Below are positions 54,201 through 58,100 of a stretch of 64,000 bases of DNA, piece by piece. This DNA is from Ostrea edulis (taxonomy: Eukaryota): NCBI RefSeq assembly GCF_947568905.1, contig NC_079164.1, positions 3,534,001 through 3,598,000 on the forward strand, in the 5' to 3' direction. The position numbers and the translations under genes are program-made. Position 1 is the stretch's first letter; each line of letters opens with the position of its first letter. The notes beneath the pieces were generated by a model. It was not told the DNA's origin and made no database searches. It was given only the letters and a program-made list of their open reading frames with translations.

Positions 54201-54831
54201 TAAAATTTTTGTTGTGATTTGGTGCATGATATGAATATCTAATAAATCATGCCTAAAAGATTCAGATATAGAATCTAATACAATATATTTTACTGATATA
54301 TCTTTTTTTCAAAGTGACATTTATCCGTAGATTAAAAAAAATATCAGCAAATAACGTTTTCGATTTTCATAAAAAAAAATTATTTAAAAAATTAGATGTC
54401 TATCTGAGTCCTTTAGGCATGTTTTCTTAGATATTTATATTATGCATCAAATCACAGCAAAATTTGGACTCTAGAGTATTATACAAAAAATTGCAAACAA
54501 AGTACCTTTTTTTATCATTCCGGAATAAATCACAAAAAAATTCACATAGAATTCGATGGTGAAATCATAGTTTATAAGAGGTGTTTTAATGAGCCATTGA
54601 ATAAAAATTAAGTGTACAGGCTAACTTTGATACGTACGAAACCAACATCCATTGAACTTAACAATTTTGTGAGAAAAAATGATTGACAAATAATTTTTTT
54701 CAAGTCACTGCCTTACTTTTTAATGAAATTTTAAAGAAATTTAGGAAAATATCCTAATCAAACTTACACAGGCTAGACGTTCTTCTATTTTCTTGGAGAG
54801 AGCGAAGAGGCCGTTCTCCATCACCCGCCAT
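15083..54831 (-). CDS. TPCN1: Two-pore channel TPC1, 26 coding exons, 816 aa. Exons 5'->3': 54831-54768, 49324-49014, 45802-45689, 42949-42819, 42450-42362, 41906-41872, 39729-39671, 39293-39194, 35023-34907, 34053-33990, 33892-33783, 33550-33484, 30997-30953, 30186-30130, 29749-29684, 29552-29480, 28773-28669, 27710-27639, 26809-26720, 25223-25126, 23964-23918, 23482-23414, 19765-19675, 19115-18994, 17125-17048, 15259-15083
   Basis: All introns are GT-AG, all phases are compatible, and the total is 2451 nt. TPC1 motifs: [43 protein letters not shown], filter I LLTTANFPDVM, VLRPFRLLRLF, GYYYLNDF, filter II FELTVVNNWF, RGERTRNKIDFSLRMHGDEVKSWLEEE. Confidence 0.96.
15885..16460. repeat. 34-bp minisatellite (AGTAAACTTCCTTACAATGTATTGGTAACAGTAT)n
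   Basis: About 17 units in TPCN1 intron 25. Confidence 0.95.
16683..16950 (-). mobile_element. Interspersed SINE-like repeat, copy 3
   Basis: Shares GAAGGGCTGCAAAATTTAGGCCTATGCTCGG...TTTGAGCAGGGAGGGATCTTT...CTTACGACAAGCAAGGGGTAC with the other two copies. Confidence 0.7.
17317..18669. mobile_element. Non-autonomous DNA element with a 121-bp terminal hairpin and 15-bp inverted repeats (possibly Crypton-like)
   Basis: Perfect 38-bp arms at 17317-17354 and 17400-17437. IR TATATCATATACCTA (17441-55) pairs with TAGGTATATGATATA (18655-69). Confidence 0.55.
20130..22105. repeat. About 2-kb satellite of 26-bp and 18-bp units (AAAGAACAGAATGGTCAC[CACATCAC])
   Basis: Tandem units; this array produces all ORF calls between 20143 and 22233. 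Confidence 0.97.
24145..24917. mobile_element. TIR DNA element, hAT-like, with a 5-bp flanking repeat
   Basis: CAGGGATTTTT / AAAAATCACTG ends, with TTATC on both sides. Confidence 0.6.
25398..26068 (+). mobile_element. HINE/pearl-like element with about 165-bp core repeats
   Basis: About 3 core repeats, a GACGGACTGA tract, and the 3' hairpin ATACCCTCCGCAACTTCGTTGCGTGGGGTAT. Confidence 0.7.
26121..26510. repeat. 50-bp minisatellite, about 8 nearly identical units
   Basis: TACAGACAAAGACACTG... recurs every 50 bp. Confidence 0.95.
27695..28625. repeat. 55/60-bp tandem array containing the TPCN1 exon-18 acceptor, 17 copies
   Basis: CCGGAATA occurs at 27701, then every 55 bp from 27756 to 28361, then at 28421, 28476, 28536 and 28596. 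Confidence 0.97.
31148..33311 (+). mobile_element. HINE/pearl-like element with about 158-bp core repeats, interrupted by a hAT insertion
   Basis: AACAAGATGTACTGTGAGC head, core repeats at 32590-33210, (GACA/GACG)n at 33216-33265, and the 3' hairpin ATACCCCCCAGAACTTCGTTCAGGGGGTAT. Confidence 0.8.
31423..32570 (+). mobile_element. Internally deleted hAT transposon carrying a TTF-type zinc-finger remnant
   Basis: Imperfect TIRs CAGTGTTC/GAGCACTG and a perfect 8-bp TSD GGTATGAC (31415-22, 32571-78). ORF 32117-32320 encodes KRKFNREWLRYD..LMFCDIC..NVFTEGC. Confidence 0.85.
35235..35820. repeat. About 58-bp minisatellite, about 10 units
   Basis: ACAGTAAAACTCTCCTTTTATACAGTGTGGGCACATTTACATCTAAATATTG repeated. 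Confidence 0.9.
36500..38038. mobile_element. PIF/Harbinger-like MITE containing a nested HINE
   Basis: TIRs GGGCTGTTCCAGAAAT / ATTTCTGGAATAGCCC, TAA on both flanks, and subterminal G and C tracts. Confidence 0.8.
36632..37153 (+). mobile_element. HINE/pearl-like element with 146-bp core repeats
   Basis: AACAAGAGGTACTGTGAGC head, about 2 core units, (GACG)n, and the 3' hairpin GTATACCCCC..ACAACTTGTTGCAGGGGGTAT. Confidence 0.85.
38335..38810. repeat. 36-bp minisatellite (CCAAATTATACAGTAAAACACGGTCATAGTGAACCT)n
   Basis: About 13 units; shares its core with the longer units at 35878-36345. Confidence 0.92.
39758..41476. repeat. 1.7-kb satellite of 44/38-bp units (CAGCAGCCTAACTACCACGCTTCAGCTGAACGATTTCT[CAATCA])
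   Basis: About 40 units in TPCN1 intron 6, ending about 28 nt from the exon-7 acceptor. Confidence 0.97.
43520..45243. mobile_element. TIR DNA element with TA target site (Tc1/mariner-like MITE)
   Basis: TIRs AGTCCCTGAAACGTTC / GAACGTTTCAGGGACT, flanking TA, and subterminal GAACGGTGAGC/GAACGGTGAACGC repeats at both ends. Confidence 0.7.
46245..46770. repeat. About 56-64-bp minisatellite
   Basis: CATCGAATCACATCTCTAATCACTTTGTACTAGGTCTTGTGCT repeated about 9 times. Confidence 0.9.
47663..48070 (+). mobile_element. Kolobok-like MITE with a duplicated 62-bp left end and an internal tRNA-like segment
   Basis: TTAAGGTAGCTCCCTACAC occurs twice (47663, 47725). A degenerate inverse GTGTAGTGAGCCAC lies near 48055. 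A/B-box-like stretch at 47837-47900. Confidence 0.45.
48376..48960 (+). mobile_element. HINE/pearl-like element
   Basis: AACAAGC head, GACGGACAGACGGACG tract, and the 3' hairpin AGTCCCCTCGACTTCATCAGTAGGGGACT followed by an A tract. Confidence 0.6.
50499..50835 (+). mobile_element. Decayed 3' fragment of a Penelope-like retroelement
   Basis: Translates as QGFQQSHLKSAFRKF*GCYNDL, resembling the C-terminal RT region of Penelope-like elements, followed by a terminal repeat region. Confidence 0.5.
54085..54569. mobile_element. MITE with long inverted arms in TPCN1 intron 1; related fragment at about 4600-4970
   Basis: TATGATTTCACCATC / GATGGTGAAATCATA plus further inverted blocks (TGTGATTTGGTGCATGATAT / ATTATGCATCAAATCACA). 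Confidence 0.55.
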
Positions 54832-55199: not shown

Positions 55200-58100
55200 A
55201 TGGCGACGGGACAAGTGTCGCGTGTCATCACGGAGGGTATTCCAGCTGAACCAACCCTAAACCTGAAGCTCCACATGCCTCAACCACCGAACAGTAAGTT
55301 TGGTGGTCCCCCAAATAAAATCAGGAATAAATTGCGACTCGATCCGTCAAGAGCATTAGAACCGACACGAAAAAAGATTGCAACTATTGAGGCTCAGCGT
55401 GTAATGTCTGTGTTTGAGGATACAATAAGTAAAGCCGAGATTGTCACCATCCTACCATACATTTTGGAGAATAAAGAAAGATTTCGGGTCAGCCTCGGTG
55501 CCGAACTGTCTCTGTTACTAGACATTCATAAAAATACTGTAGATAGCTATGAAGAAATCAAGGAACAACTGGATATTCAGTTGCGTCAAAGACGTATCCG
55601 CACTGCTAGTACAGAGAAGAGTGAAGGATATGGTGGACATGGAATGGAGGACGCAGGTGAAGTTGGGGAAACACCCACTGAAAGTCCAGTTCCTGAAGCA
55701 GAAGCTAGGGATTACTCGAGGAGAGGCAGTATGGCAAGTGTCCAGTCTGCCAGATCGGTCCAATCTGTAGAGAGTTATGATAGCCAGACAGAGAGAACGA
55801 TGAGGAGTCTCAGTCTCGTGGCACAACAGCTGAGCAGTTCCTGCAAAAACATCCTCCGAGCATTCCTGGCCAATCCCAATGCGCTTAGCATGATAAAAAA
55901 TCAGGCAAGACGATCTGATAATAGTAACGTGTTAATCAAGGACATGTGTGACCTCCGTGATATCCTCCTGAACAAACTGCTGACCACTCCAGAAGAAGAG
56001 AGAGAGAGAATGCAGTACATCCAGGAAGTCTCTAAACGGGAACGACAGAACGCCACAGTCATTGAGGACCTAGAACAGAAACTCAAGGCTGCTATGGATG
56101 AAAAAGATGAAGAAGTACATACTTTTTTTAAAAATCATTATGAAAAAAAATTATATTTAAATTATTTTATCTAGTCTTTTGCATTTGCTTTGTTTTCTCA
56201 AAATTCTTTTCCCTGTACATTCAGTTTGATACTGAAAAATTGTATATTCATTGGTAAATACAAATGGCAGTAATAAGTTCTGTACAAGTATTTTGTGAAA
56301 CAATGATAGTTTTTTTTTTCAAAAGTCTTATGCTGTTATCATATTTAGCATGGTCAAATTATTTTGTTATCTTATTTTTTTTTCAGATTAAGAAGAAGAA
56401 CTCTGTTATCAGGAAGCTTCAGGCAGACCTCCGGCAGATTGAGAAGTTTTCTGACGAGAACAACAAAAGGGTAACCAATGAAGCAGAGAAACAAGAACAA
56501 GCGGATCTGAAGAACAGCGAAGGCAAAAAACAACGTTTAATGACGGAACTTAACCAGCTGAAAACTCAACTTCAGAATGCTGTTATGGAGCACAGAGAAA
56601 ATGAGCAGGAACTCAGAAGAGTATGTGTTGTTACTGAGCATGTAGAGCAGTAGTCACCTCCAATTCTCCTCCTGCGGCTGTCTGAAATGTCTGATGTTTT
56701 CTGATCTTGCAAAACCTTGGGGGGGGGGGGGGAATTTAAATATCTTTTTTAAATTGTGCCAGAAAACATCAGGAAATTTCAGATGCTCATATCCTCAACT
56801 ATATTTAGGTACACACTGAACAAGGATATAGATGAAAAATTTCAATGTAGATGTCAGACAAATGCCAAAAGCAGGCACTTTTCAGTAATGTTAATTATTG
56901 TCATGGGGAAGAAATTATTTCTATGATTTCATTTTGATTTCCTTTTAAAACTTTAAATATATATTCTCTTACCTAATTTTTATTTGCAAAAAATAGCAAC
57001 CCATATGGTAAATTCTTTGTATGGAAATAGATGACCGATTTTGATATATATATATATATATAGATGTTTGAAATATTTGCTGCTTTGTTAACTCTTTGTT
57101 CAGTGTTATCAAGTCGATATCTAGCACCCTGCACTCTCTGTAGATGTTGTACTCCATAGCACTCTCTTATAGCTCACTCCAAATAGCACTCTCTTATAGC
57201 TCACTCCAAGTAGCAATCCTTTATAGATCACTCCACATAAAGCACTCTCTTATAGCTCACTCCACATATCACTCTCTTCTAGATCACTCCACATAGTGCA
57301 CTCTCTTCTAGATCACTCCACATAGTACTCTCTTATAGATCACTCCACATACACTATAGCACTCTTTTTTAGCTCACTCCACATAACACTCTCTTCTAGA
57401 TCACTCCACATAGCACTTTCTTATAGCTCACTCCACATAGCCACATAGCACTCTCTTCTAGATCACTCCACATAACAATCTCTAGCTCACTCCACATAGC
57501 ACTTTCTTATAGATATTTCCACATAGTGCACTTTCTTAAAGCTCACTCCACATAACACTTTCTTCTAGATCACTCCACATACACTATAGCACTCTCAAAT
57601 AGCTCACTCCACTGTTCTAGATCATTCTACATTGCACTCTCTTCTAGATCACTATACATAGCACTCTCTTATAGCTCACTCCACATAGTGCACAAACCAG
57701 GTCACAAGTGTTGATCCATAGTTCTCGACTAGACGTTTTTATCCACTTTGCTCACTTTCTCTTGCGTACATTTCTTCACACAAGTACTATATAACACAAA
57801 GTACTTTTAACTGCTCATAATAAAGGCAGATAATAATAAATTGACATAGATTTTATCTCTCAACCATAATCACAACTGTGGCAGGTGAGGGAGTCTGGAA
57901 TAGTATTTTTGAATAGCAAGCTTTAAAAGAAACAAGAATTTTTTACCATCCAGAAAGTGTTTTAAGGAGGAATAATACACCAGAGAAATTTGATATAAAT
58001 GGAAAATGGAGGAGATATGTACAATTTTATTTTGAAATTGAAAAATTTCAAATTTACTTTAAAAAATGCAGTTTTAGTAGAAAATAACATGAAAAAAGAA

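What the first reader, a model, noticed from the sequence alone, without database searches (positions are those of the whole stretch)
54768..55260. Head-to-head TPCN1-IQCD pair apparently conserved between a mollusc and humans
Seen: divergent ATGs 368 bp apart. From recall, not checked here, human TPCN1 and IQCD are also adjacent and divergent at 12q24.13. Inference: a bidirectional promoter kept since the bilaterian ancestor, linking an endolysosomal Na+/Ca2+ channel to a calmodulin-binding motile-cilium subunit and hinting at co-regulation in ciliated cells or sperm. The spacer has stayed TE-free although both genes' introns are full of repeats.
Basis: partly seen in the sequence, partly recalled or inferred. 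Interest (0 to 1): 0.7.

Follow-up and report, generated by a model that had tools for sequence, protein, structure and literature searches.

The report
Ancient head-to-head TPC1–DRC10 gene pair
In this oyster an endolysosomal ion-channel gene (TPC1) and a motile-cilium gene (DRC10/IQCD) start back to back 368 bp apart, and the same arrangement occurs in every bilaterian lineage where the upstream flank could be read (molluscs to a tortoise), so it is a real, very old example of a known kind of conserved gene pair.

Summary
The minus-strand ATG is at 54831, in a 21-codon first coding exon of TPC1. The plus-strand ATG is at 55200, the start of DRC10/IQCD. The spacer between them is 368 bp, AT-rich and single-copy.

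With DRC10 as anchor, a divergent TPC1-type gene sits directly upstream in Saccostrea, Haliotis, Lingula, Owenia, Saccoglossus, Apostichopus, Branchiostoma and a tortoise. It is absent upstream in two cnidarians. The 3' neighbour of DRC10 differs between phyla, which serves as an internal control.

The pair therefore dates at least to the protostome-deuterostome ancestor. A wombat locus was uninformative within 10 kb.

The spacers share an RFX-type core, GTTGCTAG. It is 44-fold enriched there, an 18/20 match lies at the same offset in oyster and Lingula, and the tortoise has a full X-box.

A shared promoter and co-regulation remain inference. No transcription start or expression data were available.

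This is a new member of a known kind: conserved 5'-5' microsyntenic pairs (Irimia et al. 2012). No paper in the searchable library describes this pair. Interest is moderate.

The parts
54768..54831 (-). TPC1 first coding exon: ATG at 54831, 21 codons plus 1 nt, phase 1
   Evidence: The homologous annotated exon in Saccostrea has 15/21 identical residues and a donor at the same position. The frame fits exon 2.
54762..54767 (-). GTAAGT splice donor of TPC1 exon 1
   Evidence: Saccostrea has GTGAGT at the same position.
54832..55199 (.). 368-bp spacer between the two start codons; candidate shared promoter region
   Evidence: GC 27%, CpG observed/expected 0.93. Single copy in the 895-Mb genome. 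No Rfam match of note. Blocks are conserved with Saccostrea.
55061..55080 (+). Conserved element AGAACTATTTGTTGCTAGTG, holding the RFX half-site GTTGCT (core GTTGCTAG at 55071-55078), 129 bp upstream of the DRC10 ATG
   Evidence: Identical in Saccostrea within a 36-bp perfect block. 18/20 identical in Lingula at the same offset, reached by 0 of 60 shuffles. The core is present in Saccoglossus and tortoise spacers and is 44-fold enriched in spacers versus the rest of the loci.
54843..54881 (.). Inverted repeat TTCATTCGGAACA / TGTTCCGAATTAA (13-nt arms, 13-nt loop), 12-50 nt upstream of the TPC1 ATG; function unknown
   Evidence: The core arms TTCGGAACA / TGTTCCGAA are identical in Saccostrea while the loop differs.
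48924..49324 (-). TPC1 coding exon 2 (N-terminal cytosolic region and start of IS1). The acceptor AG lies just before 49324. The lower bound is the end of the open frame, not a mapped donor.
   Evidence: Matches mouse TPC1 6c96 residues 67-140, E 4e-22. Acceptor and frame.
23834..42961 (-). Further TPC1 exons, among them 42961-42818 (IS4), 42470-42345, 39316-39167, 35023-34901 and 23989-23834 (domain II pore). The gene spans at least 54831 down to 23834.
   Evidence: PDB matches to mouse TPC1 only: residues 178-221, 316-354, 634-673. Ion_trans partial hits. Open frames listed.
55200..56114 (+). DRC10/IQCD coding exon 1 (305 codons; donor GTACAT at 56115)
   Evidence: The window's own protein carries PF27661 DRC10_N.
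56387..56620 (+). DRC10 coding exon 2
   Evidence: 98.7% identity to Saccostrea DRC10 residues 303-381. Splice sites.
62676..62747 (+). DRC10 coding exon 3
62840..63106 (+). DRC10 last coding exon, with the IQ motif and the stop codon
   Evidence: Pfam IQ, E 5.6e-7..

Best explanation
This is a genuine, ancient head-to-head gene pair. TPC1 (two-pore channel 1) and DRC10/IQCD (nexin-dynein regulatory complex subunit 10) are transcribed away from each other, with a compact region between their start codons. That region is under about 0.8 kb in six invertebrate lineages. In the tortoise it is a CpG island.

Shown: the arrangement has been kept since at least the protostome-deuterostome ancestor.

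Inferred: the most likely reason is that the promoters and proximal control elements of both genes are interleaved in this short spacer. Any breakpoint would then cut one gene off from its promoter. An RFX-type element in the spacer (GTTGCTAG core, full X-box in the tortoise) probably drives DRC10 in cells that build motile cilia or flagella. It may also give TPC1 a ciliated-cell or sperm component of expression.
For: Identities:
- TPC1 exons match only mouse TPC1 in the PDB.
- DRC10 matches PDB DRC10 and has an IQ motif.

Synteny, with DRC10 as anchor. A divergent 788-936-aa Ion_trans gene lies directly upstream in:
- Saccostrea, gap 370 bp
- Lingula, 466 bp
- Owenia
- Branchiostoma, 755 bp
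- Saccoglossus, 581 bp
- Gopherus, 2.3 kb with a CpG island
- Apostichopus
- Haliotis, 463 bp

TPC1 exon-2 homologues were found by tblastn in six of these loci. The tortoise first exon matches mouse TPC1 residues 1-37.

Internal control: the gene after DRC10 differs between phyla. It is BolA, MazG-like, CFAP73-like, an Ank/SOCS gene, or RITA.

Motif:
- The 8-mer GTTGCTAG occurs 7 times in 5.8 kb of spacers and 9 times in 330 kb elsewhere.
- A 9-mer is shared by four independent lineages; 12 of 400 shuffles reach this.
- An 18/20 match lies at the same offset in oyster and Lingula; 0 of 60 shuffles reach it.
- GTTRCY is the conserved RFX monomer site (PMC10530576).
- IQCD belongs to the human motile-cilia signature (PMC7331728).

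The class is known. Conserved ancestral microsyntenic pairs are enriched in 5'-5' orientation and short spacers (PMC3514665).
Against: - No transcription start sites, expression or chromatin data were available, so a shared promoter is not shown.
- The oyster element is only a half X-box. It has 3 mismatches to the full palindrome, and no site with at most 1 mismatch was found.
- The GTTGCTAG core was picked after looking, and it is absent from the Haliotis, Owenia and Branchiostoma spacers.
- TPCN1 is not mentioned in the main text of the human motile-cilia signature paper that lists IQCD.
- Ecdysozoans and non-bilaterians other than two cnidarians were not sampled.
- The mammalian and human arrangement was not verified here.
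Confidence: 0.6

Rival explanations
1. Passive retention without functional coupling. The two genes have independent, merely abutting core promoters. The pair survives because a spacer of a few hundred bases is a tiny target in which almost every break is harmful. The pairing then says nothing about TPC1 acting in cilia or sperm.
For: - Spacers are very short in most lineages.
- Short 5'-5' spacers are a general property of conserved pairs (PMC3514665).
- IQCD is a cilia-signature gene, whereas TPCN1 is not named in that paper's main text.
- TPC1 is described as a general endolysosomal channel (PMC5293812).
Against: - A tiny target lowers the break rate. Alone it does not easily explain retention in all nine bilaterian lineages examined while the other neighbour of DRC10 changed repeatedly.
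- In the tortoise the coding starts are 2.3 kb apart, and the pair is still kept.
- The spacer holds a deeply conserved motif. That motif could, however, serve DRC10 alone.
Confidence: 0.3
2. Regulatory-block (bystander) constraint. Distal enhancers of one gene lie inside the introns of the other, and this, rather than the spacer, keeps them linked.
For: This mechanism is the second main cause of conserved microsynteny in PMC3514665. TPC1 has long introns here, and the gene spans more than 31 kb.
Against: - Neither gene is a developmental regulator of the kind that anchors such blocks.
- Orientation and tight spacing are conserved, which this model does not require.
- The oyster introns are largely young dispersed repeats.
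- No conserved intronic non-coding block was looked for or found.
Confidence: 0.07
3. Artefact or coincidence. The 21-codon exon is a chance ORF, or the neighbours in other species are other channels, so there is no conserved pair.
For: - The exon is short.
- Pfam scores of single exons are below threshold.
- For Haliotis only the length and the Ion_trans label of the neighbour are known.
Against: - The homologous exon is annotated in Saccostrea.
- Splice phase is consistent.
- The N-terminal 'MA...E.PL' mini-exon recurs next to DRC10 in several phyla.
- TPC1-specific exon 2 is found in six loci.
- Only TPC1 is matched in the PDB.
Confidence: 0.02

Closest known systems
Conserved ancestral microsyntenic pairs (CAMPs) in 5'-5' orientation, e.g. 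HSPE1-HSPD1 (Irimia et al. 2012, PMC3514665)
   Same: Two unrelated genes, divergent, with a very short spacer. Adjacency and orientation are kept across protostomes and deuterostomes.
   Different: Co-expression and a shared promoter are documented for HSPE1-HSPD1 but not for this pair. This pair was not seen in two cnidarians, whereas HSPE1-HSPD1 reaches beyond animals. Whether TPCN1-IQCD is in that paper's supplementary list could not be checked, because the file is not held.
Vertebrate TPCN1-IQCD neighbourhood (human 12q24.13 by recall; herring chromosome 8 in PMC7115899; bovine BTA17 list in PMC6125589)
   Same: The same two orthologues are adjacent. The tortoise locus fetched here is divergent, with a CpG island between the coding starts. 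The wombat has RITA1 and DDX54 after DRC10, as in the bovine gene list.
   Different: Coding starts are kilobases apart in amniotes, probably because of non-coding first exons. The oyster spacer is 368 bp and AT-rich, with no CpG island. Orientation in human was not verified here.
RFX/X-box-controlled promoters of ciliary genes (PMC10530576, PMC2375033, PMC7498320)
   Same: The spacer core GTTGCT fits the RFX monomer site GTTRCY. It lies about 130 bp upstream of the start codon of a motile-cilium gene. The tortoise site GTAACCTAGCAAC fits the full X-box.
   Different: In the oyster the second half-site is poor (3 mismatches). No binding or expression data exist. A role of the site for TPC1 is speculation.

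Membership tests
Conserved head-to-head (5'-5') microsyntenic gene pair | Two non-paralogous genes, adjacent and divergently oriented | tested here: met
   ATGs at 54831 (-) and 55200 (+). Identities TPC1 and DRC10.
Conserved head-to-head (5'-5') microsyntenic gene pair | Adjacency and orientation kept in distant phyla, both protostomes and deuterostomes | tested here: met
   Nine bilaterian lineages including the window. TPC1 exons confirmed by tblastn or PDB matches. Two cnidarians lack it.
Conserved head-to-head (5'-5') microsyntenic gene pair | Spacer under 1 kb, the usual signature of a bidirectional promoter | tested here: inconclusive
   Start-codon spacing is 368-755 bp in six lineages. 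Transcription starts are unknown. Spacing is 2.3 kb in the tortoise and 3.6 kb as annotated in Owenia, where a candidate unannotated exon at L003:9496 would give about 504 bp.
Conserved head-to-head (5'-5') microsyntenic gene pair | Shared promoter activity or co-expression of the two genes | not testable with these tools
   No expression, CAGE or chromatin data. From the literature: IQCD is in the cilia signature and TPCN1 is not named in that paper's main text. Both proteins are linked to the acrosome reaction (PMC3952862; PMC12832936).
Conserved head-to-head (5'-5') microsyntenic gene pair | Same arrangement in human, as the finding claims | not tested
   The claim rests on recall plus amniote, fish and bovine proxies.
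Two-pore channel 1 (TPC1/TPCN1) | Sequence closest to TPC1 rather than TPC2, TPC3 or other channels, with parts of both 6-TM repeats present | tested here: met
   Five exons searched singly match only mouse TPC1 (6c96): residues 67-140, 178-221, 316-354 and 634-673. Partial Ion_trans hits. The full-length joined model was not built or searched, by rule.
DRC10 / IQCD | DRC10 N-terminal domain, coiled coil and C-terminal IQ motif | tested here: met
   PF27661 on the window's own protein. PDB DRC10 chains 8j07 and 9fqr at E 1e-21 to 7e-22. IQ at E 5.6e-7. Four coding exons collinear with Saccostrea DRC10.
X-box (RFX binding site) | GTTRCY monomer site | tested here: met
   GTTGCT at 55071-55076. 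Conserved in Saccostrea, Lingula, Saccoglossus and tortoise spacers. Consensus taken from PMC10530576.
X-box (RFX binding site) | Full palindrome GTNRCC N0-3 RGYAAC | tested here: not met
   No site with at most 1 mismatch in either oyster spacer. Met in the tortoise (0 mismatches) and near-met in Haliotis (1 mismatch).
X-box (RFX binding site) | Bound by RFX and needed for expression | not testable with these tools
   Needs ChIP, a gel-shift assay or a reporter assay.

The most novel reading that the evidence does not exclude
The spacer is an RFX-driven bidirectional promoter that has placed TPC1 under the motile-cilium and sperm gene programme since the bilaterian ancestor. TPC1 would then have a conserved, so far overlooked role in ciliated cells and sperm: Ca2+/Na+ release from acidic stores. 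The calmodulin-binding N-DRC subunit DRC10 would be co-produced as part of the same Ca2+-responsive module. The separate reports that both proteins act in the mammalian acrosome reaction would be two views of one ancient functional link.
Probability: 0.15. Interest if true: 0.7.

Novelty: new member of a known kind. Interest (0 to 1): 0.42.

Why it matters
Deeply conserved head-to-head pairs are among the few cases where gene order in animals is under selection, and each one predicts a shared or entangled promoter.

This pair joins an endolysosomal cation channel to a calmodulin-binding axonemal protein. Both have separately been tied to the acrosome reaction.

The pair comes with a short, alignable spacer and a candidate RFX element. 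That makes a concrete experiment possible: mutate one 8-bp core and read out both genes. The experiment can be done in oysters, amphioxus or mice.

If the link is functional, it would point to a role of TPC1 in ciliated cells and sperm. If not, the pair is a clean example of retention by promoter crowding.

Tried and rejected
- **Pfam on single exons.** Only sub-threshold Ion_trans hits for TPC1 and none for DRC10 exon 1, because the local Pfam copy lacks PF27661. Identity was settled by PDB sequence matches instead.
- **Full X-box scan.** Nothing with at most 1 mismatch in the oyster, Saccostrea, Lingula, Branchiostoma or Saccoglossus spacers. The oyster element is filed only as a half-site.
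- **Shared 8-mers and 10-mers.** These alone are not significant against shuffles: 207 of 400 and 48 of 400. The 9-mer, the 20-mer match and the spacer-versus-flank enrichment carry the argument.
- **Literature.**
  - No paper holds both 'TPCN1' and 'bidirectional promoter'.
  - The supplement of Irimia et al. is not held.
  - The list of human divergent pairs in PMC3815023 has neither gene.
  - The RFX target tables in PMC5838959 have neither gene.
  - The supplement of PMC7498320 is not held.
- **Latimeria DRC10.** Not on record.
- **Wombat.** No gene called within 10 kb upstream of DRC10 and no TPC1 exon there. There is only a CpG-rich edge with an X-box-like site, so it is uninformative for mammals.
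- **Candidate C-terminal TPC1 exon 15086-15259.** No PDB match, so the 3' end of the gene is left open.
- **Rfam on the spacer.** Nothing of note.
- **Steps not taken.**
  - Exons were searched one by one by reference.
  - No human contig was fetched, saved or compared.
  - The large profile search, structure prediction and complex prediction were not used. Identities were already clear, and neighbourhood alone does not justify a binding test.

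
Full report
**1. What is in the sequence**

The window is AT-rich, intron-rich animal DNA. On the minus strand an ATG (A at 54831) opens MAGDGERPLRSLQENRRTSSL. This ends one base into the next codon at 54768, in front of a GTAAGT donor.

The next open frame on that strand has an acceptor AG just before 49324. Its phase completes the split codon. It matches mouse two-pore channel 1 (PDB 6c96) residues 67-140 at E 4e-22.

Further minus-strand exons match the same chain and no other PDB entry:
- 42961-42818 matches residues 178-221.
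- 35023-34901 matches residues 316-354.
- 23989-23834 matches residues 634-673.

Two other exons give partial Ion_trans hits. The minus gene is therefore TPC1 and spans at least 31 kb.

On the plus strand, the ATG at 55200 opens a 305-codon exon. It matches dynein regulatory complex protein 10 of two solved axonemes, 8j07 and 9fqr, at about E 1e-21. Three more exons are collinear with the annotated Saccostrea echinata DRC10: 56387-56620, 62676-62747 and 62840-63106. The last one holds an IQ motif. The window's own protein carries the DRC10_N family in the precomputed table.

The two ATGs are separated by exactly 368 bases.

**2. Is the short first exon real?**

In S. echinata the NCBI gene models put the TPC1 start 370 bp from the DRC10 start. 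There the exon reads MAGNVERPLNPLRKNRRTSSL, with a GTGAGT donor at the aligned position.

Annotated TPC1 starts next to DRC10 in Lingula, Haliotis, Saccoglossus, amphioxus and the tortoise are also short N-terminal exons of the 'MA...E/D.PL' kind. The tortoise exon matches mouse TPC1 residues 1-37.

Transcription starts could not be examined for any species.

**3. Conservation**

DRC10 proteins found by the word search were used as anchors to fetch 10 kb on each side from annotated assemblies.

| Species | Group | Upstream divergent Ion_trans gene | Gap between coding starts |
|---|---|---|---|
| Saccostrea echinata | oyster | 816 aa | 370 bp |
| Haliotis asinina | gastropod | 812 aa | 463 bp |
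| Lingula anatina | brachiopod | 809 aa | 466 bp |
| Owenia fusiformis | annelid | 794 aa | 3.6 kb as annotated |
| Saccoglossus kowalevskii | hemichordate | 788 aa | 581 bp |
| Apostichopus japonicus | echinoderm | 936-aa model that overlaps DRC10 | not applicable |
| Branchiostoma floridae | cephalochordate | 793 aa | 755 bp |
| Gopherus flavomarginatus | tortoise | 814 aa | 2.3 kb |

In Owenia, an unannotated 'MANSRTPLLS' frame at L003:9496 would give about 504 bp.

tblastn with the oyster exon-2 peptide finds its homologue on the expected strand in Saccostrea, Lingula, Owenia, Saccoglossus, Apostichopus and Branchiostoma.

In the tortoise, a CpG island (GC up to 0.72) fills the space between the two coding starts.

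The gene on the other side of DRC10 is different in almost every phylum: BolA, MazG-like, a CFAP73-like gene, an ankyrin/SOCS gene, or RITA. The loci are therefore not simply frozen.

Two cnidarians lack the pair. In Nematostella a GPN-type GTPase gene lies upstream in tandem. In Rhopilema no gene is called within 10 kb upstream. No TPC1 exon was detected in either locus.

The simplest reading is an origin before the protostome-deuterostome split, or a loss in cnidarians. Ecdysozoans were not sampled.

**4. The human claim**

No human DNA was fetched or compared.

Indirect support:
- The tortoise locus is divergent.
- Herring SNPs in tpcn1 and iqcd lie 9 kb apart on chromosome 8 (PMC7115899).
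- A bovine list places TPCN1, IQCD, RITA1, DDX54 and CFAP73 within 0.5 Mb (PMC6125589).
- A wombat locus has RITA1 and DDX54 after DRC10.

The wombat shows no gene within 10 kb upstream. It has only a CpG-rich stretch at the locus edge with an X-box-like site. For mammals the check is inconclusive.

**5. The spacer**

The oyster spacer is 27% GC and has no CpG island. It is unique in the 895-Mb assembly.

The first intron of TPC1 and the long DRC10 intron carry roughly 500-bp dispersed repeats at 88-97% identity, with thousands of first-look candidates. They lie at window 53566-54072, 59587-60090 and 61076-61546. The 'TE-free' remark is true. It is weak evidence, because 368 bp is a small target.

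Alignment with Saccostrea shows conserved blocks within otherwise diverged sequence:
- An inverted repeat, TTCGGAACA ... TGTTCCGAA, just upstream of the TPC1 ATG.
- A perfect 36-bp block around AGAACTATTTGTTGCTAGTG at 55061-55080.

The second block recurs in Lingula as AGAACTAATTGTTGCTAGGG, at almost the same distance from the TPC1 ATG. It is an 18/20 match that 0 of 60 dinucleotide shuffles reach.

The core GTTGCTAG also occurs twice in the Saccoglossus spacer and twice in the tortoise spacer. One tortoise copy is part of a perfect X-box, GTAACCTAGCAAC.

Counted over all fetched DNA, the 8-mer occurs 7 times in 5.8 kb of spacers and 9 times in 330 kb elsewhere. A 9-mer is shared by four independent lineages in 12 of 400 shuffles. 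Within the 64-kb window the 8-mer occurs twice, about the chance number, and one copy is in the spacer.

GTTGCT fits the RFX monomer site GTTRCY. The full X-box is GTNRCC N0-3 RGYAAC (PMC10530576).

Three caveats apply:
- The motif was chosen after inspection.
- It is absent from the Haliotis, Owenia and Branchiostoma spacers. Haliotis has a different near-X-box 74 bp upstream of DRC10.
- The oyster site is only a half-site.

**6. Interpretation**

Shown: a real divergent TPC1-DRC10 pair, conserved across Bilateria, with short spacers and a recurrent RFX-type core.

Inferred: the spacer holds the promoters of both genes, and this entanglement is what selection preserves. The RFX-type site fits DRC10, a motile-cilium gene listed in the human cilia signature (PMC7331728). 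Whether it also acts on TPC1 is unknown.

A literature-level link exists. TPC1 takes part in the mouse acrosome reaction (PMC3952862). IQCD is reported as an acrosomal protein needed for that reaction (Zhang et al. 2019, as reviewed in PMC12832936).

Against tight co-regulation, TPCN1 is not named in the main text of the cilia-signature paper. It is generally described as a broadly acting endolysosomal channel (PMC5293812).

The main rival is passive retention by promoter crowding, without functional coupling.

**7. Comparison with what is known**

Irimia et al. 2012 (PMC3514665) described hundreds of conserved ancestral microsyntenic pairs. These are enriched in 5'-5' orientation and very short spacers, with HSPE1-HSPD1 as the textbook case.

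The present pair fits that class in every feature that could be tested. Co-expression could not be tested.

Only four papers in the library mention both genes, and none discusses their arrangement. This is therefore a new, or at least undescribed, member of a known kind. It is not a new kind of system.

**8. Verdict**

Interest is moderate. The value lies in a short, testable spacer with a candidate RFX element linking a lysosomal channel gene to an axonemal gene.

Noticed in passing
L004:14799-19545 (Branchiostoma floridae): The gene just after DRC10, on the opposite strand, is a DUF4200 gene. One of its exons matches Chlamydomonas CFAP73 (PDB 8glv, E 4e-6). CFAP73 is also in the bovine list of genes around IQCD and TPCN1. 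A three-gene block with two axonemal genes may therefore be old in chordates.
   Followed up: partly
L002:13183-14989 (Lingula) and L011:18227-21911 (Haliotis): A MazG-like (dCTP pyrophosphatase-type) gene lies tail-to-tail after DRC10 in both the brachiopod and the abalone. This extends the shared order to three genes in these two lophotrochozoans. Oysters have BolA and SelO there instead.
   Followed up: no
window 54843-54881: An inverted repeat with 13-nt arms and a 13-nt loop lies 12-50 nt upstream of the TPC1 ATG. The core arms TTCGGAACA / TGTTCCGAA are identical in Saccostrea while the loop differs. It could be a palindromic factor site or a 5'-UTR hairpin.
   Followed up: partly
window 54826-54835 and 55196-55205: The two start-codon contexts are exact reverse complements of each other. 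Both genes begin AAATATGGCG (Met-Ala). This is probably just a shared start context.
   Followed up: no
window 53566-54072, 59587-60090, 61076-61546: Dispersed repeats of about 500 bp sit in the introns of both genes. Dozens of scored copies at 88-97% identity lie on all large contigs, and there are thousands of first-look candidates. These look like young SINE- or MITE-like families.
   Followed up: partly
L008:22686-26707 (Gopherus flavomarginatus): A second gene model of the same length (432 aa), labelled DRC10_N and IQ, is listed 3 kb after the first DRC10 gene. tblastn with the oyster exon found no second copy there. It may be a duplicate model or a diverged tandem copy.
   Followed up: no
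L002:6856-6719 and 2302-2165; also 6333-6238 and 1996-1901 (Lingula): Two TPC1 exons occur twice with identical scores, about 4.5 kb apart, inside the same gene. This is either a segmental duplication or an assembly duplication in the Lingula scaffold.
   Followed up: no
L010:1-15006 (Apostichopus japonicus): The annotated 936-aa TPC1 model runs across the start of DRC10 and overlaps it on the opposite strand by 5 kb. This is either an alternative far-upstream first exon or a mis-joined model.
   Followed up: no
L009:400-1300 (wombat): A CpG-rich stretch (GC 0.57-0.62, CpG observed/expected up to 0.96) holds GTTGCTAGGCTAC about 8.7 kb upstream of the DRC10 start codon, at the very edge of the fetched locus. 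It could be the mammalian shared promoter, reached through a long first intron.
   Followed up: partly
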